Virus record (IMG/VR): IMGVR_UViG_3300028800_000001
Coordinates: 124,001-188,000 of that record
Length of the DNA: 64,000 nucleotides
Strand: one strand, 5' to 3'
Under the pieces are notes generated by a model, which did no database searches, was not told the origin of the DNA, and saw only the letters and a list, made by a program, of their open reading frames with translations. Position 1 is the stretch's first letter. Each line of letters starts with the position of its first letter. Below are positions 1,733-61,857 of this stretch, piece by piece. Made by a program: the position numbers and the translations under genes.

Positions 1733-2914
1733 CTACTTGGCTTGCTCTCGCGCCTGCCAGAGCCCAGCAAAGTATGCCAGTTCTCGAAATGCCTTGAAGA
1801 TCACCGCAGGGTTTGCCCCTGTTGATTTGCCTGCCTTACGCGGTAAATGCTTCACGCCCACCTCTGTGTAAGAATATCCAGCGCGGATAAACTTATAGAC
1901 CACTTCGGTAGACAGGAGCGCGCCCCGCGCCTCTATTTTCACTGATTGAAAATATTCGGTACGAAATAGTTTAAAGGCACAGTCAACATCTTTGATGGAG
2001 AGACCAAAGACAAACCGTACAACCCTATTCCAGCCCCAGGCATTTAGCTTGCGTATCCAGGGATCTTGTCGGTTCATACGATAGCCGAAGACACCATCGT
2101 ATGAGGAGAGAAGGGGAAGCATACTGTTTAAATCACGTATGTCAAATTGCCCATCAGCGTCCATATACATTGTATACTGTTTAGTTGCTTTTGAAAAGCC
2201 TGTAGCCAGCGCTCCACCGTATCCCTGATTCTTTTCGTGTGAATATAACTTCACACGTGGCTCAAACGTGGCAATACTTTTCACGACCCCTGCTGTGTTG
2301 TCACGAGAGCCATCATTGATCACAATAATCTCAAAGTCTTCCACCATACGCACCAGCGACCAGATACAAGCAGAGAGAAACTTTTGTACGTCTTTTTCTT
2401 GATCACGCACTACAACCACAAGAGAAAGCGTGAGTTCATGCTTTATTGTTCTTGGACGCCCTGGTATCATTTTATCCATACGTTCCTTCCCTACCACAAA
2501 GACACAAACAAGTAATGCAACAAAAGAAAATGCCATACAGAGTATCGCCACAAGCACCTTTACAAGTAGCGAATCAATACCGGCCCCTGTTACAGGAAGA
2601 ACTTTCATCACCATCGACAAAACACCTGTATTCAGTATCATATTTCCTCCAGTGACAAGCGTGAAGCGAGAAACTTGCTTCGTTGTAATTTTTCCTCGCT
2701 CCTGAAACGTCCAGAACTTATTACAGAAAAAGCTATTGATCGAAGCAATAAAGACTGCAATTGCATTATAGAAAAGCACTTTCCACCCTTCTGACGTAGG
2801 CCACATCCAGAGTAAAAAGTTTAAAGCTACAATATCAATGACTAAATTGATCGATCCAATGACCGAGAATTTTAAGATTTTTTTGAACATTTTTATTTTG
2901 GTAAAAACTACCAA
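1733..2914 (-). CDS. GtrA-like flippase domain fused to a polyprenyl-phosphate glycosyltransferase (GT2, DPM1/GtrB-like)
   Basis: N-half has 4 TMs with KFSVIG..N..SFFCNKFWTF (GtrA); C-half has INDGSRD, NQGYGGA, MDADGQF, DVDCAFKLF. Likely start is ATG 2890. Confidence 0.85.
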   Translation of the reverse strand: MVVFTKIKMFKKILKFSVIGSINLVIDIVALNFLLWMWPTSEGWKVLFYNAIAVFIASINSFFCNKFWTFQERGKITTKQVSRFTLVTGGNMILNTGVLSMVMKVLPVTGAGIDSLLVKVLVAILCMAFSFVALLVCVFVVGKERMDKMIPGRPRTIKHELTLSLVVVVRDQEKDVQKFLSACIWSLVRMVEDFEIIVINDGSRDNTAGVVKSIATFEPRVKLYSHEKNQGYGGALATGFSKATKQYTMYMDADGQFDIRDLNSMLPLLSSYDGVFGYRMNRQDPWIRKLNAWGWNRVVRFVFGLSIKDVDCAFKLFRTEYFQSVKIEARGALLSTEVVYKFIRAGYSYTEVGVKHLPRKAGKSTGANPAVIFKAFRELAYFAGLWQAREQAK

Positions 2915-5900
2915 TTCCCTTTGCCAGGATACTTACCGTTAAAACAATAAAGATGAGTACTTGAAATACTATCAGGGATGGGATTTTTAGGCAGCTTTGA
3001 AATCAGCCTCTTCTGAACGTACAAATTGGTAGATTGACCAAAAGCAACCAGAGAGAAGGAATTCTTGAATACTTTCGAATTAACGTCTATTAGCATAGGA
3101 TATCTTGCATCAGCGTTTCTCACCCCAACAATAACCCAATCAACATACAAGGAAGGATTCTTTAATGCTTTCGAAAGCACTTGGTTTGATCCAGAGTAAA
3201 TAATGTTTCTAAAATGTATGCCAACCACTTGCGATTCGTCTGGACTTTCAAGATATGTATCTTCAAGTATTGTTCCGCCGTTATAATGCTGCGAAAGATA
3301 GATATTCACATTTCTGGTTATATAGCAGCTCTGCCCATATTGACCATCCTCCAACGAAATAATTCCATTCTCAAAAATAAAAAAAGATTGCGCTACCAAT
3401 ACAATGCCAACAAGGAGATAAAGAACGTTCTTCGTAAAATTTCTTTTAAAGAAGCTAGCAAAAATTCCTAGACACATTGCAACAAAGAAACTCGCCGGTA
3501 AAACCGATTCGGTTCCAAAGCGAGCATTGAATAAGTCATTACTCACGCCAGGAACTAATATAACCACTTGACCAGTATAGAACGATATTGCGTAAAAAAG
3601 CAGCGGAGATAAAAAAGCAACTGAAGCAATGAATCTATTCGAAAGCCTTTCCTTTAAAAAGAAAGCGGCTAGACCAATTACTGAAAGCGTCGAAACAAGA
3701 ATCCCTATCGTGTCGTAACAAGCTAAAACATAATATCTAATATCTTGAACGATATTATGTTTTAGAATAGAAACTTGGTTTGGATAAAAATATTGCATCT
3801 GGTCTTGTGACGAATACGGCCCCTGCTGAAAGTAGAGAGCATTCCCAAATATTACTTTATTCCAAGCAAACCATAGAACAATACCAAGCCCTCCTATAAT
3901 ACAGAATATCAAAATGTCCGATTGTATTTCCTTCCAACTCTTCCTTTGTCTTATATCAATGAATAGCATCAAACATACAACAGAACCAAAAAGTACCCAC
4001 CCATCATATCTAGCTAGAGTGGCTAGAAAAGAAAAGATTGCAGTCAGAATAAGATATTTATATTTTCTCTCGGAGCCCCACAGTAAGAAAAAATATGCCG
4101 TTGCAGAAAATGCAGCAAAACAAACCGGCTCAGACAATGGCGTTGTCTGTAAGTATAGAACATTAGGATTAGTCAAAAAAACCAACACTCCAATAAAGCT
4201 CGCAATTCTGTTTCCAGTTACCATTGCGCAAGAAAAGAATAAAAATATTGCCGCTATAATATAACAAATCATCGAAGATATGCTACCTGCTAGTCCAGTC
4301 TTCCAAAGCCAATCGTTCCATATAAAAGGCAGCATAATCAAATGAGGTAAGGGGAGCCAAACTGTTCCTAATTGTCCAAACCCAGGAGTGGCACTATCAA
4401 TTACCGCACGAGCTATTCTCATATGCGAATAAGCATCATTATAGAGTAAAATATCCTGATGCAAAAAAGAATAAGTCGTAAAAGAAACGCTTAGAATTAT
4501 CGCCAGCAAAATAACTGCGTAAGATGAATAATCCTTAATCCTTACCTTTTTGCCAGTATGCTTTGCTTTCTTCATATCTTTGGTAATGGCTGCGCTCTGC
4601 ACCGTGGGCATTGCCAATATTTCTTCCGTGACGCTGCGCATGGCCCTGTACGACTGCGCTTTCTCCACCGGTACCAGATCTTGCGTGGTCACCGCACTAT
4701 GAAAAGCCGTATCCTCTTTGGCAAGCGCCACAATCTTATTGCTGGTCTCTTTCCACGCCTGATCAGGATCTTTGCCTGCAATATGCGTCCCGTGTCTCGT
4801 CTTCTCCCAATAATGGGGCTTCGTAATCAACTGAAAGAGTCCCTTGACCGCCGCTGCGCTAATCAGTAACCAATATACAGGCAACAACAGACACCACTTT
4901 ACGAGCTCGTAGCGCTCTCTATTCATACAGGCAATCATGGCAACATAGAGACAAAAAAGATTCCCAAAGATCAGGCATAACGTGCCCAGGTACAGAACCG
5001 GCGCTGGAAAGAGAATATGGTAAATTCCTTCGACATGACTTCTGAAAAAAAGATACACAAAGAACATGGCCCACATCAGAGGGTTGATGAAAAAGATCAC
5101 GGTGCCCACACCAATAATCCATTGCAACGAGAAAAAGGTTTTGATGCGGCTCTTCTTACGAAAGGTGTTGGTAGGATGGCGCGTTTGCACCAGGAAGGTT
5201 TGCATGTACCCTTTAATCCAGCGTGAGCGCTGACGCAGCCAGTTGCCGATATTGGCTGTTGCCTCTTCGTAGGTGGTGGAGGACAGCATTGCGGTCTTGA
5301 GTCCATACTGCGCAAGACGCATGCCCAGGTCGCAGTCTTCAGTCACATTGTACGAATCCCAGCCGCCAAGAGCGCGAAGGTACGTGGTTTGGAAATGATT
5401 GGATGTTCCACCAAGAGGAAGCGCAATACCAATACGCGACAACGCTGGCAGTATCATATCAAACCACACTGAGTATTCTATCGTGAAAAAGCGCGTAAGT
5501 AAAGATTGACGCGTATTGTAGAAGTTGAGTGACGCCTGCACACAGGCAACCTCTGGCCCGTGTTGCGCAAAGGTGAGTACGGCTTTCTTGAGTTGGGAAG
5601 GCTGAGGTACATCTTCCGCATCATAGATCACACAATACTGACCTTTAGCAAACATGAGGCCATAGTTACACGCACGTGGCTTTGTCCGTGGAGACCCCGT
5701 AGGGACGGAGACCACTGCGCAAAACGCTGGCAACGACAAGAGCGACATGGCCGTGTGCGTCTCTTTGTCGTCTTCTTCCAAAAGAAACAACACCTGGAGC
5801 TTATCTTTGGGATAATCCAGTTGCAACATCGCTCGTACATATTGCGGCACAATCTTGGCTTCTTTATAGAGTGGGCACAAAATGGTATAGGTCGGCCAAT

Positions 5901-6459
5901 CGGCACCATCAAGCGCCTCCACAATCTTATCGTCAATAGGTGTGACCGATTCTATGCCCTTTGGGCGTAACAATGCGTAGGCCAGGGTGCAAAGATGAAA
6001 GGTATACAGGAGAACGCAGAGCGCGCACAAGACCGAAAGCGTGGCAAGACCAAAGAAACCCAGGCACAGCGCAAGAACGGCAACCAGCAAACCAAGAAAT
6101 GTATATTGACCGGCTGTAATAGTGCGCAAGGCTGAAAGCTGCATGCGAAACGGGGCATAGGGATGAATTTGTTTTTCGCCAACGGTGAAGGTTTGATCAG
6201 CTATCTGCTTATAATCAAAGATTTCCTGATCTTGTCCATGACTGCTATAGCGCTGCGATTGTATCTTCAGCCAGTTGGCGTATTGTTCTAGTTCGCCACG
6301 CTGCGCTGGCGGAAAATCTTCTGACTTCCATTTACGATACTGCTGTTGCATATTCCCATATTCCCCATTTTTCAATTTAAATTTAGTTGCGTGTACCACG
6401 TCTTGATCGTTCGTGCGGCCTCTGTATTCTTTAACGAGAACGCACCGACATCGTCCCAT
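2908..6459 (-). CDS. processive GT2 glycosyltransferase fused to a GT-C (ArnT/PMT-like) membrane glycosyltransferase
   Basis: N-half has LCPLYKE, TKPRACNYG, YDAED, LGGTSNHF, VTEDCDLG, QRSRWIKG; C-half has DAYSHMRIAR, WLPLPHL, PLSEP, RYDGW and many TMs. The true start is probably downstream of 6459. Confidence 0.85.
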   Translation of the reverse strand: MGRCRCVLVKEYRGRTNDQDVVHATKFKLKNGEYGNMQQQYRKWKSEDFPPAQRGELEQYANWLKIQSQRYSSHGQDQEIFDYKQIADQTFTVGEKQIHPYAPFRMQLSALRTITAGQYTFLGLLVAVLALCLGFFGLATLSVLCALCVLLYTFHLCTLAYALLRPKGIESVTPIDDKIVEALDGADWPTYTILCPLYKEAKIVPQYVRAMLQLDYPKDKLQVLFLLEEDDKETHTAMSLLSLPAFCAVVSVPTGSPRTKPRACNYGLMFAKGQYCVIYDAEDVPQPSQLKKAVLTFAQHGPEVACVQASLNFYNTRQSLLTRFFTIEYSVWFDMILPALSRIGIALPLGGTSNHFQTTYLRALGGWDSYNVTEDCDLGMRLAQYGLKTAMLSSTTYEEATANIGNWLRQRSRWIKGYMQTFLVQTRHPTNTFRKKSRIKTFFSLQWIIGVGTVIFFINPLMWAMFFVYLFFRSHVEGIYHILFPAPVLYLGTLCLIFGNLFCLYVAMIACMNRERYELVKWCLLLPVYWLLISAAAVKGLFQLITKPHYWEKTRHGTHIAGKDPDQAWKETSNKIVALAKEDTAFHSAVTTQDLVPVEKAQSYRAMRSVTEEILAMPTVQSAAITKDMKKAKHTGKKVRIKDYSSYAVILLAIILSVSFTTYSFLHQDILLYNDAYSHMRIARAVIDSATPGFGQLGTVWLPLPHLIMLPFIWNDWLWKTGLAGSISSMICYIIAAIFLFFSCAMVTGNRIASFIGVLVFLTNPNVLYLQTTPLSEPVCFAAFSATAYFFLLWGSERKYKYLILTAIFSFLATLARYDGWVLFGSVVCLMLFIDIRQRKSWKEIQSDILIFCIIGGLGIVLWFAWNKVIFGNALYFQQGPYSSQDQMQYFYPNQVSILKHNIVQDIRYYVLACYDTIGILVSTLSVIGLAAFFLKERLSNRFIASVAFLSPLLFYAISFYTGQVVILVPGVSNDLFNARFGTESVLPASFFVAMCLGIFASFFKRNFTKNVLYLLVGIVLVAQSFFIFENGIISLEDGQYGQSCYITRNVNIYLSQHYNGGTILEDTYLESPDESQVVGIHFRNIIYSGSNQVLSKALKNPSLYVDWVIVGVRNADARYPMLIDVNSKVFKNSFSLVAFGQSTNLYVQKRLISKLPKNPIPDSISSTHLYCFNGKYPGKGNW

Positions 6460-7502
6460 CCCCAGAAGAAAGTCCCATGAATAAGTTCGTCTTTCGCGAC
6501 ATAACTGAGCGCCGCGTTCACCGCCCCTGCTTGCTCACTTTGATCTTCGGCTGTTGTACTCGTCTGTCTCCAGGGCTCAAAGAAAGAATCGGTGCTATCG
6601 CGGTAACCAATCTCAGAAATAATAAGCATCTTATGCACCCGCGCCGCGTACAGATCAAGTTGCTCCCCTACAGTGCTTGCCCACAGCGCCCCCATTTGTG
6701 CCGGATCAACTCTGTAGCCAGAAGAAATAATTGGAATGTACTCAGAGACGCCAATGTAGTCAAGCGAGGAAAACCAGGAAGGGGGGTTGTCTTCAAGGTT
6801 TCCCCAATTCGTATCATACGTCACCTTGCCTGAGAAGAGTGCGCGCACCTGCGCAATATACCTCTCCCATAAGTCAGTCTGCCCATTGTTTTGTAACCAT
6901 CCGGCCTCTGTACCCAACGAGAGCTGTTCTACGCGGTTCTGCTGTGCCACCTCGATATAAGGCGTGTAGAGTTTCTCAAACGCCGTAAACCATGTTTGCT
7001 CTTGTACGGTCGTATCAAAGGTAATGAGATTGGCCCAGCCACCAGTTGCGCGTGTCGTAAGTAGCGGAATAAGAAAAATATGATAGCCATGCGCATGCGC
7101 GGCTTTTACACCTGCCGTAAAGGTGGCAAGTGAAGGCGTCACATGATCAAAGAAAGAATTAGCGTTCTCTGCCTGCGAGAAAACCAGCGGCATTTCAATC
7201 CAGGCCGCACCCGTTTGCTCGTGAAGACTGCTCATGCTTTGCTGCCACCCTGTATCCTTTGACCCGTAGCCATCAGTGTTCCACCTGGGGTAGACCATAC
7301 CCGTTTGAAACGCTTGCGCGCTACTATAAGGAGTTGGTGTTGCAGTCGGAGAAGGGGAATGAAATACAGTGGGCTTTGGGGAAACCACACTGCCTACTTT
7401 GCGTTGTACCGGAAAATCGTCCAGCGATGCGGTACCAATGGCAATAAACGCTACGGCCACAATCGCTACAAAAAAGAGACGAAATACGATACCACTTTTC
7501 AC
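6372..7502 (-). CDS. membrane-anchored/secreted glycoside hydrolase, GH113-like TIM barrel
   Basis: signal/TM helix, Pro-Thr linker, LSLGTE (acid/base), FSGKVTYDTNW, LDYIGVSEY, ISEIGY (nucleophile). Confidence 0.7.
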   Translation of the reverse strand: MKSGIVFRLFFVAIVAVAFIAIGTASLDDFPVQRKVGSVVSPKPTVFHSPSPTATPTPYSSAQAFQTGMVYPRWNTDGYGSKDTGWQQSMSSLHEQTGAAWIEMPLVFSQAENANSFFDHVTPSLATFTAGVKAAHAHGYHIFLIPLLTTRATGGWANLITFDTTVQEQTWFTAFEKLYTPYIEVAQQNRVEQLSLGTEAGWLQNNGQTDLWERYIAQVRALFSGKVTYDTNWGNLEDNPPSWFSSLDYIGVSEYIPIISSGYRVDPAQMGALWASTVGEQLDLYAARVHKMLIISEIGYRDSTDSFFEPWRQTSTTAEDQSEQAGAVNAALSYVAKDELIHGTFFWGWDDVGAFSLKNTEAARTIKTWYTQLNLN

Positions 7503-52917: not shown

Positions 52918-53733
52918 CTACGAAGCTGACGGAAGCAGCGCCATGACCTTTGTTGAGAGCAGGTGCGGATTCACCTGTCCGATGGCCTCACGAATTTGTT
53001 CCAAGATCATTGGATTGAGATATTCAATCCATCCATCCAAATTGGCTACCAGTTGATCGCTGGTACGAATTGCATGCATTGAGCAGAGCGTCTTAATGAG
53101 CCAGACCACCTGTGGTGCCAACACATTGATTTCCATCTCTGTGAGCCCATAATCCCGCGCCGTTTTGACGGTTTTAGGAAGCACACACAGTACCCGATCA
53201 CCTTCCGCCATAAGCGGCTTGCCAGTGGTGATTTCGGTCTCAATAGAAACTGAGGGAACGCAATACAGGTAAAGTGGAATATGCTGATCATTTAAGGCTT
53301 TGCGCAACGGGAGTAATCGCTGATGCTCAAATTCACCGCGTGCGATATTCATTGCACCATTAAAAAAGCGCTCATCTATATGGCGCGCCTGAATAAGCCC
53401 TTTACTCTGGCGAAGAATAGCAGCAAGGTTATCTACTGCCCAACGCATGTACCCAAAATGCCATGCGAGATTGAGAATAGTTGGGGCAAGTAATTCTTCT
53501 GTGCCTGCCCCAACATTGGTGACCACGAGCCCTCTATCTTCTGTTTGCTCATGACGCGTCCCAAAGTGCCCAGTCGTCAGCGGGAACTTCACCGCTGACC
53601 CGAAGTACGGACGCATCTTGGAGGAATCATAGAGAGAAATGCCATAGAGACTTTGCAACGCAATGTCAGCAGTCTCCCAGGTCTTTGTTCGGTATTTAGC
53701 CACGTACACTTCCTTCTTCGATGACACTTTCAC
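52918..53733 (-). CDS. hypothetical protein coupled to ParB-like gene
   Basis: 271-aa ORF overlapping the parB-like stop; no motif recognised. Confidence 0.65.
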   Translation of the reverse strand: MKVSSKKEVYVAKYRTKTWETADIALQSLYGISLYDSSKMRPYFGSAVKFPLTTGHFGTRHEQTEDRGLVVTNVGAGTEELLAPTILNLAWHFGYMRWAVDNLAAILRQSKGLIQARHIDERFFNGAMNIARGEFEHQRLLPLRKALNDQHIPLYLYCVPSVSIETEITTGKPLMAEGDRVLCVLPKTVKTARDYGLTEMEINVLAPQVVWLIKTLCSMHAIRTSDQLVANLDGWIEYLNPMILEQIREAIGQVNPHLLSTKVMALLPSAS

Positions 53734-55123
53734 TCACCGTACTTCGGTGAGACATTGCATCTTGAATAGTCTGCTTCGCACTATCGAGCGTATCTTGTAC
53801 CGCTACGATTTGCGCTAAGAGTCCAGCAATTTCCGCCTGAGACAGCCATCCAATCCCCTTCACAAATCCAGGCGACAAGAGATGAAAAAACGATTGTTGC
53901 GTCTGCGACAAGAGCTCTGTGCCATGCGCAACCGCTTGCCGGACAGAGATTTCTGCTTTAAGTTGGCGCTGTTCATCGCGCTGCGCGTAATAGGACTCAA
54001 TGTTGGCTTTTGTTTCTGCCAATTGTGCGTCCATTGCGGTGCGCTGCTGCGCAAGCATTTCGTCCAACTGAGAACGAATAGCCTTTGCGGCCTCCGCTTT
54101 AGACTGCTCAATCTCGCTTTGCAACTTTGTTTGCAGCGTGGTAAAACGGTTGCGCTCTTGCGCGGCTTCTTGTAACTTTGCTGCAAGCTCTTTTTCGCGC
54201 TGCTCAATAATTTCAGGACGGCGTGCCACCTCTTTGACCAAACGCTGATGTTGCGCCTCAAGATCTTTGTACTGTTTATTGAGCACATCCACTTGGGCTT
54301 CATAGCGTGTTGCCGTTTCCTTTTGCGCACCCTCTAACCGCTGTGCGTAGTGTTCTTCCAACTTTTGACGCGTCTGTTCCATCTCCAGCGCTAGCTTTGC
54401 GGCCAACTCTTTGTCGAAACGCTCTTCAAAGATTTCACGACGACGGCGTTCGATATAGGCATTCAGTTGCTCTCTGGTGACAATCTCACGCGCAATCACC
54501 AAATCAACAACTTTGGCAACCTCGCGGTAGTCATAGACCCCATCAAGCGTTCCTGCTTCACCAATCGTATGTCCTGCTTTGTATTCACGTAGTGGCAGCA
54601 CTTTGTTGAGCGTTGACCAACTAAGTTGAAGTTCGTTCTCATCTTGAACGGCGTTCACCATATATTGCTGCATACGATTTTGCAGATCATCAGGAAAGTA
54701 GCCAATGGCAATGTAGTCAGTCACCGTTGTAAAGTGCACGCCCACAGCGCGACTGATTTCTCGTGTGGAGGTGCCTTGCCGGTGGAGATTTGCGAGGCCA
54801 CGACACTCTGAGAGGAAGGTAAATTCACGGACAGCATTCGCTGCCTGGAGCATCATATTGGCTTCGCTGTCATCAACGATACCGTAACTGATCACCCAAA
54901 TGAGCTTCTCATTTTGTTCCAGCGAAGAACGGATACGCCCTTCACCATCAATGCACTCATAAAAGTCTCCTGGGAGAACGCGAACGGTGGGAAGTTGTAC
55001 CACCCCAATCTCACGCACGCTCTGGCGAAGACGCTCAAATTCAGCCCCCTGGTGCTTACGTGGATTTTTGGCAGTAAACTTGATCTTGCGCGGATCAACT
55101 TGCACTAATTGCGGTGTTTGCAT
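53696..55123 (-). CDS. ParB/Srx-like N-domain + HTH + long coiled coil
   Basis: VDPRKI....NPRK, LRQSVREIGVVQ, IDGEGRIR, TREISRAVGVHFTTV; about 200-aa heptad region. Confidence 0.75.
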   Translation of the reverse strand: MQTPQLVQVDPRKIKFTAKNPRKHQGAEFERLRQSVREIGVVQLPTVRVLPGDFYECIDGEGRIRSSLEQNEKLIWVISYGIVDDSEANMMLQAANAVREFTFLSECRGLANLHRQGTSTREISRAVGVHFTTVTDYIAIGYFPDDLQNRMQQYMVNAVQDENELQLSWSTLNKVLPLREYKAGHTIGEAGTLDGVYDYREVAKVVDLVIAREIVTREQLNAYIERRRREIFEERFDKELAAKLALEMEQTRQKLEEHYAQRLEGAQKETATRYEAQVDVLNKQYKDLEAQHQRLVKEVARRPEIIEQREKELAAKLQEAAQERNRFTTLQTKLQSEIEQSKAEAAKAIRSQLDEMLAQQRTAMDAQLAETKANIESYYAQRDEQRQLKAEISVRQAVAHGTELLSQTQQSFFHLLSPGFVKGIGWLSQAEIAGLLAQIVAVQDTLDSAKQTIQDAMSHRSTVSESVIEEGSVRG

Positions 55124-55596: not shown

Positions 55597-55633
55597 AAAA
55601 AAAAAAGAGACACCCCAAAAAAGATGTCTCTTT
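55597..55633 (-). terminator. intrinsic terminator
   Basis: AAAGAGACA...TGTCTCTTT followed by a long T run on the minus strand. Confidence 0.55.
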
Positions 55634-55648
55634 GGATTATTTTCTTAT

Positions 55649-56290
55649 TTAATTCTTTCTGAGTGTCAAAACTGCTGGGAGCATATTAAACATCATGACC
55701 CCTACAGGGAGAAGAAAAACCGTGAGGCAAAGCCCATATGCAATGTTTGCCCAGATATATCCTGCCCAGCATCCAATAAAGCAGAAATACAATGCGCGCA
55801 AGAGAAAGTTCAGTTGTGCCGTTCCTCCAACAGTGACATTGACGTTCGTCTGCATAAAGGAGTTGTTCCCAGTTTGCAACGATGTCGTAGAAACGTTCAC
55901 GTTTGTTTCTATTCCCTTTGTCTTGAGCGTCATAATTTGCGGTATGCGGTTTAAGATCATTAAACCGGCTGGTAGCGTAATAATCAGCGAGCAAAGAAAA
56001 AAGCCGAGGTTAAGACAAAACCAGCCTGCCCACCAACCCACAAAGCAGAAATAGAGCGCTCGTACAAAAAATCCTGGCCCTGATGCCTTTACATTCACGT
56101 TGACATTTGTTTGCATCATATTTGTTGCCATCATCGGCTGCGGCGGATAATACGGCTGTTGCGCAAAGGGTTGCCCAGGTTGTTGCTGCGTTTGTGGTGG
56201 CATCGGTGGATACTGGTACATCGGTGCATATCCTTGTTGCGGATACGATTGCCCAGTAGTCTGATTCGGTTGTTGCGGAAATTCTTGCAT
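55649..56290 (-). CDS. YccF-like duplicated-domain membrane protein with Gln/Pro-rich N-terminus
   Basis: two copies of RALYFCF.G.WAG.....C....LP.G.M..N..P...TL. Confidence 0.7.
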   Translation of the reverse strand: MQEFPQQPNQTTGQSYPQQGYAPMYQYPPMPPQTQQQPGQPFAQQPYYPPQPMMATNMMQTNVNVNVKASGPGFFVRALYFCFVGWWAGWFCLNLGFFLCSLIITLPAGLMILNRIPQIMTLKTKGIETNVNVSTTSLQTGNNSFMQTNVNVTVGGTAQLNFLLRALYFCFIGCWAGYIWANIAYGLCLTVFLLPVGVMMFNMLPAVLTLRKN

Positions 56291-56364
56291 GGTTTCTCCT
56301 TATGGACGCGTTTATTCAAGTATAGCACGAAGTTTTTTCTTCGCGAGATTTTCAGACGAATTTC

Positions 56365-56712
56365 CTATACATGCTTCTTTTCCCTACTCTTCTTGATAAT
56401 CCAGAGCGTGAGAAGAAGTATGCCAAGGACAATGAGCCCCAGGAAAACACGTTGAAAGATCTGGTCGTTTTGCTGGTTAATCAACTGCTGCTGATAGCCA
56501 TAGTCATGCGAGAAGCCATTAGTGGTGACCGTACAAATTTCACCAATGCCCATCGGTTGCCCATTACAGGTTGGCCCGTTTATGGGAAGAATGGCCCCTA
56601 GAATGCCGCGTCCAATGTTATATCCCATAAGCGCAAGGCATCCCAGGATAAGAAGGATAAAAGGAATGGCGTAGCACCCCTGCATTATTTTTGCTTTTGT
56701 TGTATCTTTCAT
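56365..56712 (-). CDS. two-TM membrane protein
   Basis: hydrophobic N- and C-terminal helices around a small Cys loop. Confidence 0.6.
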   Translation of the reverse strand: MKDTTKAKIMQGCYAIPFILLILGCLALMGYNIGRGILGAILPINGPTCNGQPMGIGEICTVTTNGFSHDYGYQQQLINQQNDQIFQRVFLGLIVLGILLLTLWIIKKSREKKHV

Positions 56713-56718
56713 TTTCTC

Positions 56719-57357
56719 TTAATGACTATAAAGAATACGGTAGTCACCACCGTGATCAGCGCAAGAACCTACTGTCCCACCGGTTAACAGGTATTTGAGA
56801 TCAACACATTCGATCACATACCCTGTGCCACTTGAGAAGGTAGACGCGCACGAATAATAGGTACAAAAATCTGCTGGAGGATTAGTAATAAAACTTCCAC
56901 CAGTCGGATCAAAACTAAAGTTCGCTACATCACTTGCAGGTGTTGGCGTGACCGCAAGCTTTGGCACCGTAGGAGTGTTCGTGGGTACAGGCGTCACTGT
57001 TGGCGGTATCGCTGTCGGAACACTTGTTGCCACGGCTGTCGGAGGCACTACGACCGGTGGAGCCTGCGAAGGCGACGTTGGCACCTCTGTTGTTGCAACA
57101 GTCACCACCCGCGTCTGGACAATTGTTTTTTCAGCAGGCGCGTCTTTGGTCGAAAGCCAGAGTGCGCCGGTAAAGATGCAAAAGCTGAGTACAACAATGC
57201 AACACGTTGAAACCAGCGCGCACCTGCCTGCGGTGTCAGAGGTTTTCCAAATTTCTTTGAGATTTTTCTTCCGTTTCTTCTTTGGCTGAAACGAAGGCAT
57301 AGTATACATTTCCGTATAAGGATGCGGTTCCATAAAATGATCATCATTGGGATTCAT
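56719..57357 (-). CDS. membrane-anchored Pro/Thr-stalk protein with Cys-rich C-terminal domain
   Basis: TM, PT linker, NPPADFC..C...YVIEC...GSCADHGG..LYSH. Confidence 0.7.
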   Translation of the reverse strand: MNPNDDHFMEPHPYTEMYTMPSFQPKKKRKKNLKEIWKTSDTAGRCALVSTCCIVVLSFCIFTGALWLSTKDAPAEKTIVQTRVVTVATTEVPTSPSQAPPVVVPPTAVATSVPTAIPPTVTPVPTNTPTVPKLAVTPTPASDVANFSFDPTGGSFITNPPADFCTYYSCASTFSSGTGYVIECVDLKYLLTGGTVGSCADHGGDYRILYSH

Positions 57358-57407
57358 AAGTATATATTCCTCAGATGTGCCGCCCCGCGTAAGAGCGGCA
57401 CCAAAAA

Positions 57408-58109
57408 CTAGTGACTATATAATGCTTGTAAAACGCCACCATCACGCGAACATGCCCCGCGCACTCCACCACTATGCGTATACACACCATTGGCGCATTC
57501 GGCAACATACCCGTTGGCGCTTGTCCAAAAAGAGCTCACGCAAGAAAAGTACTGTCCACAGAAATCGCCTGGAGGACTAAAAATGAGATTGCCTGAAGAA
57601 TCAAAATCATAGCCCCAAGGATTGCCATTCACACCCGTTATCGGTGTCGTAGGTATTGGAGCGGGTGTTGGCGATGGCGGCACAGGCGTCGGCACAAAGA
57701 GCGGCTGGATATTAAAACGCTTCTGTGCAGTTATATACCCAAAGCCCACATGTGAGTTCACTTGCACAAGCGCATAGCCACCGGTTTGACAAGGTGCGCC
57801 ACTATCCCACTGCCACGTATAGCGCCCCAAACTATTTGCATTATGATTGGGATAAACAGTACGGATCAAACCGGTACTACACCGGTAAAAGATTACCATT
57901 CCTGAGCGAGACCCAGGCACGCTGAGAATAGTAATGTGACTGGTTGCATTTGCATTCATCACCCCGCCAATAATGGCAATCGGTGGTTGGCTGGCATGTG
58001 TTCGCGTCAATTGGACGGTGAACGCTGCCAGAAAAAAGCTCACAACCAACACGGCTGCGAGCAATTTCACTTTCATAACAAGACTCCTTCGAAAATAGTT
58101 TCCACACAC
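57408..58109 (-). CDS. secreted protein with the same Cys-rich C-terminal domain
   Basis: signal peptide (ATG 58076), NPWGYDF..PPGDFC..C..YVAEC..SGG.RGACSRDGG..LYSH. Confidence 0.7.
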   Translation of the reverse strand: MCGNYFRRSLVMKVKLLAAVLVVSFFLAAFTVQLTRTHASQPPIAIIGGVMNANATSHITILSVPGSRSGMVIFYRCSTGLIRTVYPNHNANSLGRYTWQWDSGAPCQTGGYALVQVNSHVGFGYITAQKRFNIQPLFVPTPVPPSPTPAPIPTTPITGVNGNPWGYDFDSSGNLIFSPPGDFCGQYFSCVSSFWTSANGYVAECANGVYTHSGGVRGACSRDGGVLQALYSH

Positions 58110-58136
58110 ATAGACGAAGAAGCAGTATGAAAGTAG

Positions 58137-58493
58137 CTATCTCCCCTTTTTTGGCTCAAGGAGTAGCCAGGGCGATTCTTCACGGAACGTCAAACGGATT
58201 ACCCCATGAATTGTAACCCCTGGAATTGTGTTATATCTTGGCGAAAGCACCAATATGTCTCGCGCCCACTCACCATGCGGTTGAAAGTCTATCTTTCCAC
58301 AGGCCGCAGAAAGATGCTGCCGCAGTAAGCGTCCAAAGAGCGGCCAACACTTTTTCTTTGAAAGAAATTCTGTGTCCTTGCGCATTCGCTCAAATGCCTC
58401 CAAGATAGGCTGCATATCAAGATCGCTGCTAATTACGATATCAAAAGTTTCACCATCAGACAAACGTAATTGTATTGGTTGTTGTATCATCAT
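58137..58493 (-). CDS. hypothetical protein
   Basis: 118-aa ORF in operon orientation. Confidence 0.55.
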   Translation of the reverse strand: MMIQQPIQLRLSDGETFDIVISSDLDMQPILEAFERMRKDTEFLSKKKCWPLFGRLLRQHLSAACGKIDFQPHGEWARDILVLSPRYNTIPGVTIHGVIRLTFREESPWLLLEPKKGR

Positions 58494-58513: not shown

Positions 58514-59857
58514 TTAATCAAGCGCGCCGCTACGTGCCCACCGTTGCCAGCTTGCCTCTTTCTTACGCAGCGAAAGCCAGATGGATTGTATCAGCGCATA
58601 TATTTCTACAAACGTACACAGATAAAAAAGTAACCAGCCAATAGGAGCAAGAAGAAGATAACTCCCCTGCTCTCGACTTTCCCACCATTGAATCGCAAAC
58701 ATCAACGCAACGACAATGATCCCTGAGAAAAACGCTGACATATCCCCCGTCAGAAACGAGAAGATGTAGAGCACCAGAATAAAGATCGGCTCAAAGCCAA
58801 GTTGCACATCCCCAAAGATCGCAAGCGGAAGTACCAGCCACGTCAAAAGTTTATTATGCTGCGGTTTGAGCGAGAAGAAGAGCCTCCTGTGTTCCCAAAA
58901 AGTTTGAAACCTTCCACGCTTCCACCGAAGTCGTTGTTTCATCAGACCATAGAGCGTTGATGCCCCTTCTGTATAGACGATAGCATCAGGGCAATACACA
59001 ATGCGCATTCCTGCTTCCTGTATCCTGACTGAAAGCTCAATATCCTCAGTGATATTTTTGGTACTGTAGCCACCAAGCTGCTGAAAGACTTCTTTGCGAA
59101 ATGCGCCTGCTGCACCACCAATAATATAAATGGTATTAAGTAGGCTGTCGGCGCGTTTAAAGTAAAATGAAAGCAAAAACTCCAGCTCTTGCACCGTTCC
59201 AACAAGCGTCTTCGCATTGCCAATCTTCACATTGCCCACTGCTGCCATCACGGCAGGATTACGAAACGCGTTGACATACGCCTCAACTGCGTATTCGTGG
59301 ACATGACAATCCGCATCTATCGAAAGCAGAAGATCGCCTTTTGCCAACTTGAGTGCGGTATTGAGTGCGGCCCCTTTGCCACCATTTTCCTGATACCAGT
59401 ACACCAGTTTGATTGCTTCATGCACACCATCAAGCTCACGCTCGTACTTTTCAATGAAACGACGAATGAGTCGATCCGAGCCATCCGTTGAGCCGTCATT
59501 GACAATAATAATCTCCATATGTTTGTAGGTACTCTTGAGGAGGGATTTCACGGTATGCAAAATCCCTACCTCTTCATTCCAGGCCGGTATCAGTACCGAG
59601 ACATAAGGATGATATTGCTGGACAAAGTGATCAACAAGCACTTGCTCACGTTTTCCCATAACATGAAACCAGGGAGAGATAAACATGTATAGCGTGTACT
59701 TTGTCAGTAACACCGTTGCAAAGAATACAATGAGTGCACGCACAAGGATAAACCAGATCGATGTGATCGTATGTGCATGCAGCAGAAAGGACGACGCCGC
59801 AAGAAAGAGCGTCACGATATAGAGTGCTGTATAGACAGCGATTTTTGCACCACGCAT
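58514..59857 (-). CDS. processive GT2 polysaccharide synthase (PgaC/IcaA/chitin-synthase-like)
   Basis: IPAWNEE, NDGSTD, NGGKGAALN, DAD, GAAGAFR, TEDIELS, QRLRWKRG; N- and C-terminal TMs. Confidence 0.92.
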   Translation of the reverse strand: MRGAKIAVYTALYIVTLFLAASSFLLHAHTITSIWFILVRALIVFFATVLLTKYTLYMFISPWFHVMGKREQVLVDHFVQQYHPYVSVLIPAWNEEVGILHTVKSLLKSTYKHMEIIIVNDGSTDGSDRLIRRFIEKYERELDGVHEAIKLVYWYQENGGKGAALNTALKLAKGDLLLSIDADCHVHEYAVEAYVNAFRNPAVMAAVGNVKIGNAKTLVGTVQELEFLLSFYFKRADSLLNTIYIIGGAAGAFRKEVFQQLGGYSTKNITEDIELSVRIQEAGMRIVYCPDAIVYTEGASTLYGLMKQRLRWKRGRFQTFWEHRRLFFSLKPQHNKLLTWLVLPLAIFGDVQLGFEPIFILVLYIFSFLTGDMSAFFSGIIVVALMFAIQWWESREQGSYLLLAPIGWLLFYLCTFVEIYALIQSIWLSLRKKEASWQRWARSGALD

Positions 59858-60246
59858 TAGTCTTTTTTGAAAGTCTTTCGTAGCGCCACCAAGTATGCAG
59901 TCGTATCAGAAGACACTTCCTGCTTCTTTGGACGCATCGTAGAAAACAGTTCCACCGTTTGTTCTTTGGTCGTTTTATTGCGCGCAAGGGCAGAGGCAAA
60001 GTTACTCCAGAGAATAAAGAGTGCCACAAAGGCCACAATGCGATAAATCGGCCAGGGCGCAAGATAGAAGTAGACCAATGATCCTACCTCTCCTGCGGCC
60101 ACAAGGTACAGCGCCTCCAAGCCAATCACAAAGGCAAGATTGCGCTTTGGTACTTTCTTTGGTGGAGGTTCTTCAAGAACGGGTGGACTTTTCATCGGCT
60201 TCATCGGAAGCGTCAGCCTGGGCGGAATAATATAGCCACTATTCAT
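59857..60246 (-). CDS. small two-TM membrane protein
   Basis: two hydrophobic helices; coupled to GT2 by TAATG and overlaps the GH18 stop. Confidence 0.65.
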   Translation of the reverse strand: MNSGYIIPPRLTLPMKPMKSPPVLEEPPPKKVPKRNLAFVIGLEALYLVAAGEVGSLVYFYLAPWPIYRIVAFVALFILWSNFASALARNKTTKEQTVELFSTMRPKKQEVSSDTTAYLVALRKTFKKD

Positions 60247-61357
60247 TGAGCGCTCCGTTTGAAAACTTCGCCTGATACCAGGAGTCGAATTGCGGATAGA
60301 CGCTTCGAAAGTCCAACACCGTTTGTGGTACTTCTGCGACAGGCGCGGGTTGTGGCGAAAACCAGAGGTTGCCCCCTAAGTGCCAGACCGAGACATTGCT
60401 AATTCCTTCTTGCATTACAAGTTGCAATTTGGTATCGAGCGTCTGCATATCACTGTAGTCATAGGCAATACCATTACTTGTCCACATCATTTCCGCAGAA
60501 GACTCATCACGTTTGGCCGTTGCAAAACCAGGAAAACGTTCCGACTGCTCATAGGTATCTTTGCTCATCTGATAGCTATGTACCCGCCCATGATACCCAT
60601 AGCTCGGAATGCCAATCACGATTTTCTCTACTGGCAGTTTTGCTTTCATCCACAGACAGATGTTTTTGAGCCACGCAAGCGGTTGCACTGGTGTCCCTGC
60701 ACCATTATCATATTGATTATCGTAGGCCATCACCACCAGATAGTCCACCGGAAGGGTGGCAAAGTCTTCATAGCGCCACTGATAATAGCCCTGCTCTGTC
60801 TCATTGCTAATCGCTGGCCCATCAAGCATCAACGCAGCCCCGCTTTGATGCAGAGCGGCCCCAATCTCACCCATTACTATTTTATATGCCTGATAATATT
60901 CAGCAGACCAGGAACTAAAATCTTCAATATCAAATTCTACGCCTGTGAAACCTGTCGTTTGCAAAAAGTTGGTGAGCGTCGTAATGCAGGCGCTTGAGGC
61001 TGCGGTATCTTGCGCAAGCACCATAATTCCTGCAATCGTGCCAGAAATAGTCGCAAACTGTTGTGTGCTATGCGCCTTGAGTGTTGCGACATTTTGCGCA
61101 CTATAGCCATTGCACTCAGCATCCGTAATTTCAGAGAGTACCCCGTTGTCGTGAAGTGTGAAATATTCAGGTTTGACAACCTGAATGCTGCGTCCATCAG
61201 CAATTTCGGAAGGTGCGGCGCAAGCAGGTGGGCCAGGATAAATCCAGCCTCCTAGTGTGAGCGACGAAGTCATACGATGTTCTTCTCCTTGTACAAACAA
61301 TAAAATTCCAACAAAAATCAACATTAAAAAGAAAATTCGTTTTTTCATAGAGAACAC
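60239..61357 (-). CDS. secreted GH18 chitinase-like glycoside hydrolase
   Basis: signal peptide, GFTGVEFDIE (DxE), VMAYD, KIVIGIPSYG, SVWHLG. Confidence 0.85.
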   Translation of the reverse strand: MFSMKKRIFFLMLIFVGILLFVQGEEHRMTSSLTLGGWIYPGPPACAAPSEIADGRSIQVVKPEYFTLHDNGVLSEITDAECNGYSAQNVATLKAHSTQQFATISGTIAGIMVLAQDTAASSACITTLTNFLQTTGFTGVEFDIEDFSSWSAEYYQAYKIVMGEIGAALHQSGAALMLDGPAISNETEQGYYQWRYEDFATLPVDYLVVMAYDNQYDNGAGTPVQPLAWLKNICLWMKAKLPVEKIVIGIPSYGYHGRVHSYQMSKDTYEQSERFPGFATAKRDESSAEMMWTSNGIAYDYSDMQTLDTKLQLVMQEGISNVSVWHLGGNLWFSPQPAPVAEVPQTVLDFRSVYPQFDSWYQAKFSNGALNE

Positions 61358-61503
61358 AATGAGGCGAGTGCGCGACTGTCAGTGGTTCATACCCTCTCTA
61401 CGAAAGATACCAAAAAAAAGTGGCTTTGTCGAGAGAAAGTACTAATTGCTTTCATTTTCAGAAGCAATCAGTGTATGATGGGCGCAAAAAAAGAGGAGAG
61501 ACC

Positions 61504-61857
61504 ATGTCAAAGGAGACGCGACAAGCCTGCTATGATGCCCTTAATAGACTGGCGAAATGGCGCACTATTTTTACCGGCTGGCAAGTGGGGCACAAGACAA
61601 AAGATGATGCGGAGAGCGCGGCTATTCGTGACCACCGTGAAGTGACGATGTTACTACGAGTAGAACTGAATGCGATTACACGCTTATTGTTAAAGGAGAA
61701 GATTTTTAGTGAGGAGGATTTTCATGTAGCAATGACGAGCGAAGCCATTCTTTTAGATCAAGATTATGAGCGGCGCTTTCCTGGTATTCGCACCAGCAGC
61801 GCTGGACTCGAATTTGACCAACGCGCTAAAGAGACAATGAAAGATTGGTTACTTTAA
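61504..61857 (+). CDS. hypothetical protein
   Basis: GAGGAG RBS before MSKETRQ; 117 aa. Confidence 0.6.
   Translation: MSKETRQACYDALNRLAKWRTIFTGWQVGHKTKDDAESAAIRDHREVTMLLRVELNAITRLLLKEKIFSEEDFHVAMTSEAILLDQDYERRFPGIRTSSAGLEFDQRAKETMKDWLL

What the first reader, a model, noticed from the sequence alone, without database searches (positions are those of the whole stretch)
58514..61357. Second glycan operon: GH18 + small TM partner + PgaC/chitin-synthase-like GT2
Seen: three translationally coupled genes: a secreted GH18 with DxE intact, a 2-TM protein, and a GT2 with D,D,D,QxxRW. Known: PgaC needs the small membrane partner PgaD; GH18 acts on beta-1,4-GlcNAc; chloroviruses coat hosts with virus-made chitin or hyaluronan. 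Inference: a bacteriophage version of virus-directed GlcNAc-polymer synthesis on the host surface, independent of the first glycan cluster.
Basis: partly seen in the sequence, partly recalled or inferred. Interest (0 to 1): 0.68.

Follow-up and report, generated by a model that had tools for sequence, protein, structure and literature searches.

The report
Phage-borne polysaccharide synthase cassette from host
A 327-kb soil phage carries an intact three-gene cassette, copied from Ktedonobacteria-like bacteria, that should make and trim a sugar polymer (probably N-acetylglucosamine-based) on the infected cell's surface; the same cassette turns up in at least three other large-phage contigs.

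Summary
On the minus strand lie three overlapping genes. One is a signal-peptide GH18 (60239-61357) with an invariant ExDxE/MxYD/W catalytic set. One is a 129-aa 2-TM protein (59857-60246). One is a 447-aa membrane GT2 (58514-59857) with D121, D181xD183, TED272 and Q308RLRW.

The window is part of a complete 327,295-bp phage with terminal repeats, from rhizosphere metagenomes. The cassette is cellular in origin. Ktedonobacteria, other Chloroflexota and CPR bacteria carry the same small-TM/GT2 pair (55-67% identity), often with the GH18 beside it.

The GT2 folds like processive synthase-translocases, and chlorovirus hyaluronan synthase is the best match. It forms a distinct clade, sister to the PgaC/IcaA/MatB group. 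It fails the PgaC and NodC family cut-offs. The small protein is not homologous to PgaD or IcaD, and no deacetylase is present. So it resembles a PNAG synthase but is not a Pga/Ica member.

The product is most likely a GlcNAc polymer, linkage unresolved.

The claim that this cluster is independent of the first glycan cluster is not supported. In other phage contigs, orthologues of first-cluster genes lie close to this cassette. Verdict: a new variant of a known kind, moderately interesting, function untested.

The parts
60239..61357 (-). Secreted or anchored GH18 glycoside hydrolase. The longest ORF is 372 aa from GTG 61357; the likely true start is ATG 61348, giving a signal peptide. Catalytic residues are E141, D143 and E145, with Y212-D213 and W325.
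   Evidence: Pfam GH18 scores 53.4 bits. The model has pLDDT 92.4. Best PDB matches are 5jh8 (C. violaceum chitinase) and 4s3j (SleL). It is 50% identical to the Dictyobacter aurantiacus cassette GH18.
59857..60246 (-). 129-aa two-TM protein, the putative small subunit of the synthase. TM helices lie at about residues 36-60 and 66-88. Asn82 in TM2 is invariant, and the C-terminal tail carries a DTTxYL motif. It belongs to an unnamed family.
   Evidence: A homologous small 2-TM gene lies directly upstream of the GT2 in all 16 loci aligned. No Pfam, NCBIfam, PHROG or PADLOC family matches. Complex prediction with the GT2 gave weak support: 0.45 against a best control of 0.00.
58514..59857 (-). 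447-aa membrane-integrated processive GT2 synthase-translocase. It has 2 N-terminal and 3 C-terminal TM helices and a GT-A domain at residues 86-300. Motifs: D121, D181xD183, TED272, QRLRW312, and the PgaC-type signature VGNVKIGN.
   Evidence: Best NCBIfam is PgaC_IcaA at 185 bits, below the 422 cut-off. The model has pLDDT 80.8. The best PDB match is chlorovirus HAS 7sp7 (TMq 0.65), then BcsA and chitin synthases.
61404..61432 (-). Promoter-like site (TCGACA-17-TATCTT, with TG before the second hexamer). It lies in the ~150-bp divergent intergenic region upstream of the GH18.
   Evidence: This is a consensus match only. The number of such sites in the region equals the shuffle expectation, so the evidence is weak.
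55604..58493 (-). Five co-directional downstream genes, possibly in the same transcription unit. The first (118 aa, soluble) starts 20 nt after the GT2 stop. The others are a secreted 222-aa protein (start 58076), two membrane proteins (212 and 115 aa) and a 213-aa membrane protein. The first strong terminator-like hairpin lies at 55633-55604.
   Evidence: These genes have no homologues in any other cassette locus, so they are not part of the conserved module. Co-transcription is inferred from spacing only.
1733..7502 (-). The 'first glycan cluster': a GtrA-TM+GT2 fusion (1733-2914), a 1183-aa processive-type GT2 (2908-6459) and a GH113 (6372-7502). It co-occurs with the cassette in other phages.
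   Evidence: The L005 orthologues (GH113 37% identical, large GT2 46% identical) lie directly beside the cassette. In G001/L010 the GtrA-GT2 orthologue (30% identical) lies two genes downstream of the cassette.

Best explanation
The three genes are a self-contained, synthase-dependent exopolysaccharide module of cellular origin, from Ktedonobacteria-like Chloroflexota. It is carried as an auxiliary cassette by a 327-kb rhizosphere phage.

Proposed mechanism: the 447-aa GT2 sits in the host membrane. Together with the 129-aa two-helix subunit, it polymerises a UDP-sugar taken from the host pool and pushes the growing chain out through its own channel. The sugar is most likely UDP-GlcNAc. The secreted GH18 cuts after N-acetylated sugars by substrate-assisted catalysis, and so trims, releases or length-controls the polymer outside the membrane. 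The role of a matching hydrolase beside a synthase, as BcsZ has for cellulose, is from general knowledge of these systems. Expressed from the phage, the module would remodel the surface of the infected or lysogenised cell, probably together with the phage's other glycan genes.

Shown here: gene structure, intact catalytic residues, fold, cellular origin, recurrence in phages, and conserved small-gene/GT2 coupling.

Inferred: physical complex (weak computational support), GlcNAc as the sugar, the linkage (beta-1,4 favoured by the GH18, beta-1,6 favoured by GT2 kinship), surface display, and the benefit to the phage (for example receptor masking or aggregation).
For: Gene anatomy and invariant catalytic residues.

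Fold: the GT2 model matches processive synthase-translocases (chlorovirus HAS TMq 0.65, then BcsA and chitin synthases). The GH18 model (pLDDT 92.4) matches chitinases and SleL.

Cellular origin: Dictyobacter and Ktedonospora carry small-TM/GT2/GH18, with GT2 60-61%, GH18 50% and small protein about 30% identical. Bacterial contig L007 has the same gene order as the phage. Its P-type ATPase is 73% identical to genes in two genomes drawn from the class of a Ktedonobacteraceae MAG.

Coupling: a small 2-TM gene lies directly upstream of the GT2 in 16 of 16 loci, with an invariant Asn. Complex prediction scored 0.45 against a best control of 0.00. That mark was reached by 58 of 80 solved complexes and 2 of 110 mismatches, but scores of 0.60 or under are weak. 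The runs agree in at least 40% of contacts and the partner pLDDT is at least 56.

GH18 linkage: it is adjacent in all 4 phage or phage-like contigs, in 3 of 6 Chloroflexota loci and in 1 CPR locus, on either side of the synthase.

GlcNAc: the best family model is PgaC_IcaA. The clade is sister to PgaC/IcaA/MatB-like/DPANN (91/71). It shares the GN(P/V)xIxN and ITEDI signatures with PgaC/IcaA. The GH18 keeps the acetamido-dependent catalytic set.

Recurrence in phages: G001 (177,637 bp, terminal repeats, unrelated capsid), L005 and L058. Cassette GC is 46.9% against 46.6% for the phage genome.
Against: No experiment or expression data exist. Only DNA runs hold this sequence.

The GT2 fails the PgaC_IcaA and NodC equivalog cut-offs. 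Its clade sits on a long stem (2.03 substitutions per site), so donor and linkage cannot be transferred from relatives with confidence.

The nearest solved GH18 relatives include SleL and YdhD, which act on spore peptidoglycan. The GH18 might therefore remodel the wall rather than the polymer.

Most CPR orthologues of the synthase lack a nearby GH18, and GH18 relatives exist in Legionella. The link is frequent, not obligatory.

Complex support is only weak.

The host is inferred from gene kinship only. RecA gave no signal.
Confidence: 0.55

Rival explanations
1. The synthase makes a polymer that is not GlcNAc-based, such as a beta-glucan or a heteropolymer. The GH18 is then a SleL/YdhD-type peptidoglycan N-acetylglucosaminidase that opens the thick wall of the host so the polymer, or something else, can pass or be anchored.
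For: The closest solved GH18 relatives include the cortex-lytic enzymes SleL and YdhD. Many sources name homologues 'spore germination protein YaaH'. The GT2 is only about 30% identical to any characterised enzyme, and plasmid-borne lactic-acid-bacterial GT2s match at a similar level. Most CPR orthologues have no GH18 nearby; DUF11 surface proteins follow the synthase instead.
Against: The GH18 is linked to the synthase on either side, in phages, Chloroflexota and one CPR genome. From general knowledge, CPR bacteria do not make spores, which argues for a role tied to the polymer. P0001 has no LysM or other wall-binding domain. All characterised enzymes in the neighbouring clades (PgaC, IcaA, and MatB from own knowledge) use UDP-GlcNAc.
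Confidence: 0.25
2. It is an ordinary member of the Pga/Ica PNAG system. The GT2 equals PgaC/IcaA and the 129-aa protein equals PgaD/IcaD, making beta-1,6 PNAG as in biofilm bacteria.
For: The best NCBIfam model is PgaC_IcaA (185 bits). It shares the GN(P/V)xIxN, ITEDI and KQRLRW motifs. The size and TM layout are similar. A small 2-TM gene is coupled to the synthase.
Against: The score is far below the 422.3-bit cut-off, which true PgaC (648) and IcaA (633) pass. The family is a separate clade with 99/98 support. The small protein shows no similarity to PgaD or IcaD and lies upstream, not downstream. No CE4 de-N-acetylase is found in the locus or anywhere in the phage genome, nor in the cellular loci listed. 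The accessory enzyme is a GH18, a family not known to cut beta-1,6 links (own knowledge).
Confidence: 0.1
3. The cassette is a functionless passenger, or an assembly or binning artefact in which bacterial DNA was joined into a viral contig.
For: Phage records that carry pgaC or icaA in the public phage collection look like bacterial contigs. The cassette is clearly of cellular origin.
Against: The cassette lies inside a terminally repeated, 100%-complete virus record with phage genes on both sides. The same junctions occur in a second record (G003/L008) and in contigs of four further rhizosphere runs at 99% identity or more, with no indels. Its GC equals the phage's. All catalytic residues are intact. 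Three other phage or phage-like contigs carry it.
Confidence: 0.05

Closest known systems
PgaCD / IcaAD poly-beta-1,6-GlcNAc (PNAG) synthases
   Same: Both are membrane GT2 enzymes of about 410-450 aa, with 2 N-terminal and 3 C-terminal TM helices and the D,D,D,QxxRW motifs. They share the GN(P/V)xIxN and ITEDI signatures. PgaC_IcaA is the best-scoring family model. A small 2-TM protein is encoded beside the synthase.
   Different: This family is a separate clade and scores far below the family cut-off. The small protein is not homologous to PgaD or IcaD and is encoded upstream. There is no CE4 deacetylase and no outer-membrane porin. A GH18 takes the place of the GH153 domain of PgaB.
Chlorovirus hyaluronan synthase and chitin synthase (virus-directed host-surface polysaccharide)
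   Same: Both are virus-encoded processive GT2 synthase-translocases. Chlorovirus HAS is the best structural match of the model (TMq 0.65). In both cases the idea is a virus coating its host with its own polymer.
   Different: Sequence identity is only 16-19%. The host is bacterial, not algal. This system has two subunits plus a dedicated hydrolase. The phage has no precursor-supply genes such as GlmS/GFAT or a nucleotidyltransferase, whereas chloroviruses encode some (own knowledge). Surface fibres have not been observed here.
NodC and chitin synthases (beta-1,4-GlcNAc)
   Same: These are GT2 enzymes with D,D,D,QxxRW motifs that use UDP-GlcNAc. The GH18 family is the classic hydrolase for their products.
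   Different: The NodC model scores 85 bits against a cut-off of 550. NodC falls outside the sister group in the tree (on a long branch). This family has ITED in place of GEDR.
Synthase-plus-hydrolase operons such as BcsA/BcsB/BcsZ (cellulose)
   Same: The logic is the same: a processive synthase, a membrane partner and a secreted hydrolase of the family that cuts the product. BcsA is among the top structural matches.
   Different: There is no PilZ domain and no BcsB-like large periplasmic subunit. The hydrolase is GH18, not GH8. The host is probably a monoderm.
Phage Gtr-type O-antigen conversion (GtrA/GtrB/GtrC)
   Same: Both are phage-borne glycosyltransferases that alter the host surface. 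The N-terminal GT-A part matches PHROG 'GtrB-like' weakly. The phage's first glycan cluster holds a GtrA-TM+GT2 fusion.
   Different: Gtr enzymes add single sugars through a lipid carrier. This GT2 has the processive QxxRW/TED apparatus and its own channel helices.

Membership tests
PgaC/IcaA PNAG synthase (NCBIfam TIGR03937 equivalog) | Whole-protein score at or above the curated cut-off (422.3 bits) | tested here: not met
   P0003 scores 185.2 bits. Cellular and phage orthologues score 178-191 bits. E. coli PgaC (648) and S. aureus IcaA (633) pass.
PgaC/IcaA PNAG synthase | Groups inside the PgaC/IcaA clade in a tree | tested here: not met
   It is a separate clade (99/98). It is sister (91/71) to a group holding the MatB-like, PgaC/IcaA and DPANN sequences.
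PgaCD / IcaAD two-subunit synthase | Small membrane subunit homologous to PgaD or IcaD | tested here: not met
   hhalign of the 16-sequence profile gives probability 1.3% against E. coli PgaD and 0.1% against S. aureus IcaD. No PgaD or IcaD family hit was found.
Pga / Ica / Mat PNAG systems | CE4 de-N-acetylase (PgaB, IcaB, or the MatB N-terminal domain) in the system | tested here: not met
   PF01522 is absent from the whole phage genome. It is not listed in the cellular loci L003, L004 and L007.
Pga / Ica PNAG systems | Product is beta-1,6-linked poly-GlcNAc | not testable with these tools
   This needs product chemistry: NMR, dispersin B sensitivity or anti-PNAG antibody.
NodC chitooligosaccharide synthase (TIGR04242) and chitin synthases | Score at or above the cut-off (550 bits), and the GEDR motif | tested here: not met
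   P0003 scores 84.6 bits; S. meliloti NodC scores 751. The alignment shows ITEDI where NodC has GEDR.
Processive membrane-integrated GT2 synthase-translocases (BcsA/HAS/CHS class) | GT-A domain with D, DxD, (T)ED and QxxRW, plus interface and TM helices forming a channel | tested here: met
   The motifs are invariant in 43 sequences. The model has pLDDT 80.8 with 5 TM helices. Foldseek finds CvHAS (TMq 0.65), BcsA (0.61) and chitin synthases at E of 1e-10 or lower.
Glycoside hydrolase family 18 | Pfam score over the cut-off, (beta/alpha)8 fold, catalytic DxE, MxYD and a conserved Trp | tested here: met
   PF00704 scores 53.4 bits against 29.6. D143, E145, Y212, D213 and W325 are invariant. 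The model has pLDDT 92.4 and matches 5jh8, 4s3j and class V chitinases. Hydrolytic activity and substrate were not testable.
Chlorovirus-type virus-directed surface polysaccharide | Virus genome encodes the synthase | tested here: met
   The cassette lies inside a complete 327-kb virus record with terminal repeats and in three further phage or phage-like contigs.
Chlorovirus-type virus-directed surface polysaccharide | Virus also encodes sugar-precursor enzymes, and the polymer appears on infected cells | tested here: not met
   No GlmS and no NTP_transferase are found in the phage genome. Polymer on infected cells is not testable here.

The most novel reading that the evidence does not exclude
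Large soil phages of filamentous Chloroflexota carry a portable two-module 'coat-building' programme. One module is a GT2+GH113 system and the other is this GT2+small subunit+GH18 system. With them, the phages make the infected or lysogenised host cover itself in phage-specified polymers. This would be a bacterial counterpart of chlorovirus hyaluronan/chitin fibres.

The GT2/small-subunit/GH18 family would itself be a previously unrecognised bacterial route to a chitin-like (beta-1,4-GlcNAc) polymer, spread between Chloroflexota, CPR bacteria and phages.
Probability: 0.2. Interest if true: 0.8.

Novelty: new variant of a known kind. Interest (0 to 1): 0.58.

Why it matters
Among viruses, polysaccharide synthases that build whole polymers are known mainly from chloroviruses. 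Phages are known to tweak host glycans with single-sugar transferases. My literature searches found no description of a phage carrying a complete synthase, partner and hydrolase module.

If the module works, phages could change cell-surface matrix, aggregation and phage susceptibility in soil Chloroflexota, and could move polymer-making ability between lineages. The underlying cellular family is uncharacterised. It is a distinct GT2 clade with its own conserved 2-TM partner and a GH18, and it is present in cultured Dictyobacter and Ktedonospora. It therefore gives a tractable route to asking whether bacteria make a chitin-like or a new PNAG-like polymer.

Tried and rejected
- DNA search of the phage collection found no similar phage.
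- Protein hits in 'phage' records annotated pgaC or matching icaA were set aside as probable bacterial contigs, for example an UNVERIFIED_ORG 282-kb 'Staphylococcus phage' carrying an ORF series whose lengths fit IcaA (412 aa), IcaD (101 aa) and IcaB.
- PADLOC: no defence-system match for the three genes or the five downstream genes.
- ESM Atlas look-alikes of the 129-aa protein: nothing at 0.9 or more and no structural hit.
- hhalign against PgaD and IcaD: no similarity.
- Complex prediction gave only weak support: 0.45 against a best control of 0.00. It is not used as proof of binding.
- Host assignment through RecA: about 35% identity to Chloroflexota and CPR genomes alike, so uninformative.
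- Expression or co-transcription from reads: all 10 runs that hold the stretch are DNA and none is RNA. Contigs from four runs show only presence and near-identity.
- The terminator-like hairpin at 58062-58038 was rejected. It lies in the signal-peptide coding part of the next gene, whose start is ATG 58076.
- The promoter scan is no better than shuffles.
- The GH18 as a virion tail enzyme (PHROG 'minor tail protein' hit) was rejected. The protein has a signal peptide, is orthologous to the cellular cassette GH18, and is the only GH18 in the genome.
- Literature searches found no description of this family or of phage-borne synthase cassettes.
No alternative genetic code was needed.
Full report
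**1. What is in the sequence**

On the minus strand of the window lie three ORFs at exactly the reported coordinates: 60239-61357 (372 aa), 59857-60246 (129 aa) and 58514-59857 (447 aa).
- The first stop overlaps the second start by 8 nt (ATGAATAG).
- The second stop overlaps the third start by 1 nt (TAATG).
- Upstream, 61358-61506 is a divergent intergenic region. A plus-strand gene starts near 61507 and a weak promoter-like site lies at 61432-61404.
- Downstream, the next gene starts only 20 nt after the GT2 stop. Five co-directional genes, mostly secreted or membrane proteins, follow before the first convincing terminator-like hairpin at 55633-55604.
- Those five genes have no counterpart in any related locus. 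The conserved unit is therefore the three genes.

**2. The three proteins**

P0001 is a GH18.
- Pfam scores 53.4 bits against a cut-off of 29.6.
- The motif is G-V-E141-F-D143-I-E145. E141, D143, E145, the MxYD pair Y212-D213 and W325 are invariant in 39 homologues. This is the full set needed for substrate-assisted cleavage after an N-acetylated sugar (established GH18 chemistry).
- The model (pLDDT 92.4) matches the C. violaceum chitinase 5jh8, the cortex-lytic SleL and class V chitinases.
- The longest ORF gives a textbook signal peptide starting at ATG 61348. The public gene call begins at M29 and omits it. However, 22 of 39 homologues as called have a hydrophobic N-terminus, and a near-invariant Cys pair suggests life outside the cytoplasm.

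P0002 has two hydrophobic helices and no match in Pfam, NCBIfam, PHROGs or PADLOC.

P0003 is a GT2.
- D121, D181xD183, T270-E-D272 and Q308RLRW312 are all invariant in 43 homologues.
- The model (pLDDT 80.8) has two N-terminal and three C-terminal TM helices around a GT-A domain.
- Its best structural matches are chlorovirus hyaluronan synthase (TMq 0.65), bacterial cellulose synthase BcsA and chitin synthases. These are the processive synthase-translocase class.

**3. The genome is a phage**

The window contains a HK97-type capsid, a prohead protease, a tape measure protein, a DnaE-type polymerase, RecA and a Ser/Thr kinase.
- It is positions 124001-188000 of a 327,295-bp IMG/VR record with direct terminal repeats, rated 100% complete.
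- The same phage occurs in ten rhizosphere metagenome runs. Contigs from four of them cover the cassette at 99% identity or more, without indels.
- The genome also holds a tyrosine recombinase and a ParB-like protein. A lysogenic or plasmid-like state is therefore possible.

**4. Origin of the cassette**

The GT2 has thousands of relatives. The named ones at 57-61% identity are Ktedonobacteria: Ktedonospora formicarum, Dictyobacter aurantiacus and Ktedonosporobacter rubrisoli.
- In Dictyobacter and Ktedonospora the GT2 is preceded by a small or N-terminally extended 2-TM protein and followed by a GH18. The GH18 is 50% identical to P0001, and the small protein about 30% identical to P0002.
- Bacterial metagenome contig L007 has the phage's gene order, GH18/small/GT2. 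Its P-type ATPase is 73% identical to genes in two genomes of the class of a Ktedonobacteraceae MAG.
- In that class the GT2 is patchy. Only 5 of 81 sampled genomes have a hit at E of 1e-100 or lower.
- CPR bacteria (Saccharibacteria, Parcubacteria, Paceibacterota, Falkowbacteria MAGs) carry orthologues at 55-59% identity, each with a 65-99 aa 2-TM gene directly upstream. DUF11 surface proteins follow the synthase, and only one CPR locus has GH18 genes.
- Aligning the 16 small proteins shows one family, with an invariant Asn in TM2, a YR-x-V loop and, in Chloroflexota and phage forms, a DTTxYL tail.
- The conserved core is therefore small subunit plus GT2. The GH18 is a frequent but not obligatory third member, found on either side.

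**5. Recurrence in phages**

The cassette, always in the order GH18/small/GT2, is also found in three other places.
- G001: a 177,637-bp terminally repeated, 100%-complete virus record whose capsid is unrelated to this phage's.
- L005: a 40-kb phage-like contig.
- L058: a 62-kb phage-like contig that shares several other genes with this phage.

Cassette GC (46.9%) equals the genome's (46.6%). It is therefore a resident, not a recent graft or a chimera.

**6. Relation to the first glycan cluster**

The window's first cluster comprises a GtrA-TM+GT2 fusion (1733-2914), a 1183-aa processive-type GT2 (2908-6459) and a GH113 (6372-7502).
- In L005 the orthologous GH113 (37% identical) and large GT2 (46% identical) lie directly beside the cassette.
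- In G001 the GtrA-GT2 orthologue (30% identical) lies two genes downstream of the cassette.
- The two clusters thus travel together in phages and probably serve one programme.
- Both follow the same logic: a processive synthase plus a glycoside hydrolase.

**7. What family is the synthase?**

- The best NCBIfam model is PgaC_IcaA, at 185 bits against a cut-off of 422. The NodC model gives 85 bits against 550. Genuine E. coli PgaC (648), S. aureus IcaA (633) and S. meliloti NodC (751) pass.
- In a maximum-likelihood tree the phage, Chloroflexota and CPR sequences form one clade (99/98) on a long stem. This clade is sister (91/71) to a group containing MatB-like, PgaC/IcaA and DPANN archaeal sequences. 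NodC lies outside, on a long branch.
- The three phage copies are not resolved as one group.
- The family shares the VGN(P/V)xIxN and ITEDI signatures with PgaC/IcaA. NodC has GQLTASN and GEDR there, and BcsA has QTPH.
- The small protein shows no similarity to PgaD or IcaD (hhalign probability 1.3% and 0.1%), and its gene sits upstream rather than downstream.
- No CE4 deacetylase exists in the phage or in the listed cellular loci.

So the system works like a PgaCD/IcaAD-type two-subunit synthase, but it is not a member of that family.

**8. Do the two membrane proteins bind?**

Conserved translational coupling in 16 of 16 loci is the main argument. A complex prediction gave weak support.
- The median score was 0.45, against a best control of 0.00.
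- That mark was reached by 58 of 80 solved complexes and 2 of 110 mismatches, but scores of 0.60 or under are weak.
- The runs agree in at least 40% of contacts, and the partner pLDDT is at least 56.

**9. What polymer?**

- For GlcNAc: all characterised relatives in the neighbouring clades use UDP-GlcNAc, and the GH18 keeps the acetamido-dependent catalytic machinery.
- For beta-1,4: every characterised GH18 substrate has this linkage (own knowledge), and no deacetylase is present.
- For beta-1,6: kinship with PgaC, IcaA and MatB.
- Against any firm call: about 30% identity, a long stem in the tree, and GH18 relatives that cut peptidoglycan (SleL, YdhD).
- My estimate: a GlcNAc-based polymer about 0.65. 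Within that, beta-1,4 is somewhat more likely than beta-1,6.
- The phage has no GlmS or nucleotidyltransferase, so the donor must come from the host pool.

**10. What is it for?**

This part is inference only. Made in an infected or lysogenised cell, the polymer would change the cell surface. It could mask receptors against other phages, glue cells or hyphae together, or protect the infected cell. Recurrence in at least four phage contigs with intact catalytic residues argues for a selected function.

**11. Verdict**

This is a new variant of a known kind: a cellular, uncharacterised PgaC-like synthase family with its own small subunit and a GH18, repeatedly carried by large soil phages together with a second glycan module. 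Nothing about activity, product or expression has been measured.

Noticed in passing
window 1733-7502 (-): The first glycan cluster holds a GtrA-TM+GT2 fusion, a 1183-aa processive-type GT2 (its L005 orthologue also carries a PMT_2/GT-C part) and a GH113 (a beta-mannanase family). It has the same 'synthase plus hydrolase' logic as the finding. It co-occurs with the cassette in L005 and G001.
   Followed up: partly
window 55649-58493 (-): A run of five phage-specific genes lies directly after the GT2. One is soluble (118 aa), one is secreted (start 58076) and three are membrane proteins. The genes at 57408-58076 and 56719-57357 share a C-terminal domain at 43-46% identity. They have no family and no homologues in other cassette loci.
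   Followed up: partly
G000:C1:39586-40038 (outside the window) and window 53696-55123 (-): A tyrosine recombinase (Phage_integrase, 72.6 bits) and a 475-aa ParB-N protein are present. This huge phage may be temperate or be maintained as a plasmid prophage.
   Followed up: no
window 60239-61357 (-): The public gene call for the GH18 starts at M29 (344 aa, behind an AGGAG) and drops the signal peptide encoded by the longer ORF. Several close homologues are also called short. Their start sites may be systematically miscalled.
   Followed up: partly
L012-L016 (CPR MAG loci), downstream of the GT2: In Saccharibacteria, Parcubacteria and Paceibacterota MAGs the orthologous small-TM/GT2 pair is followed by 512-565 aa signal-anchored DUF11 proteins, one of them with a PG_binding_1 domain, instead of a GH18. 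In the GT2 tree the CPR sequences nest inside the Chloroflexota ones.
   Followed up: partly
L003 (Ktedonospora formicarum BNJF01000004.1, 589224-602594): The cellular cassette is flanked by IS605/TnpB-type transposases, a resolvase and a group II intron reverse transcriptase. This mobile neighbourhood is consistent with the patchy distribution (5 of 81 genomes of the class).
   Followed up: no
window 30767-32119 (+) and 48105-49424 (+): A 450-aa Ser/Thr protein kinase, and a 439-aa GIY-YIG/HNH-type homing endonuclease lying on the opposite strand from the neighbouring tail-spike-like gene (46043-47482, -). In G001 an HNH endonuclease sits directly after the cassette.
   Followed up: no
phage collection records CAKLQH020000010.1 and OR844989.1 (L052): 'Phage' records carrying a gene annotated pgaC (CAKLQH020000010.1) or an IcaA-like ORF series (OR844989.1) look like bacterial chromosome contigs filed as phage (one is UNVERIFIED_ORG, 282 kb). 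They are not evidence of phage-borne PNAG synthases.
   Followed up: partly
one search hits P0151, P0158, P0161: Legionella species encode signal-peptide GH18 proteins 45-47% identical to P0001. Whether a matching synthase lies nearby was not checked.
   Followed up: no
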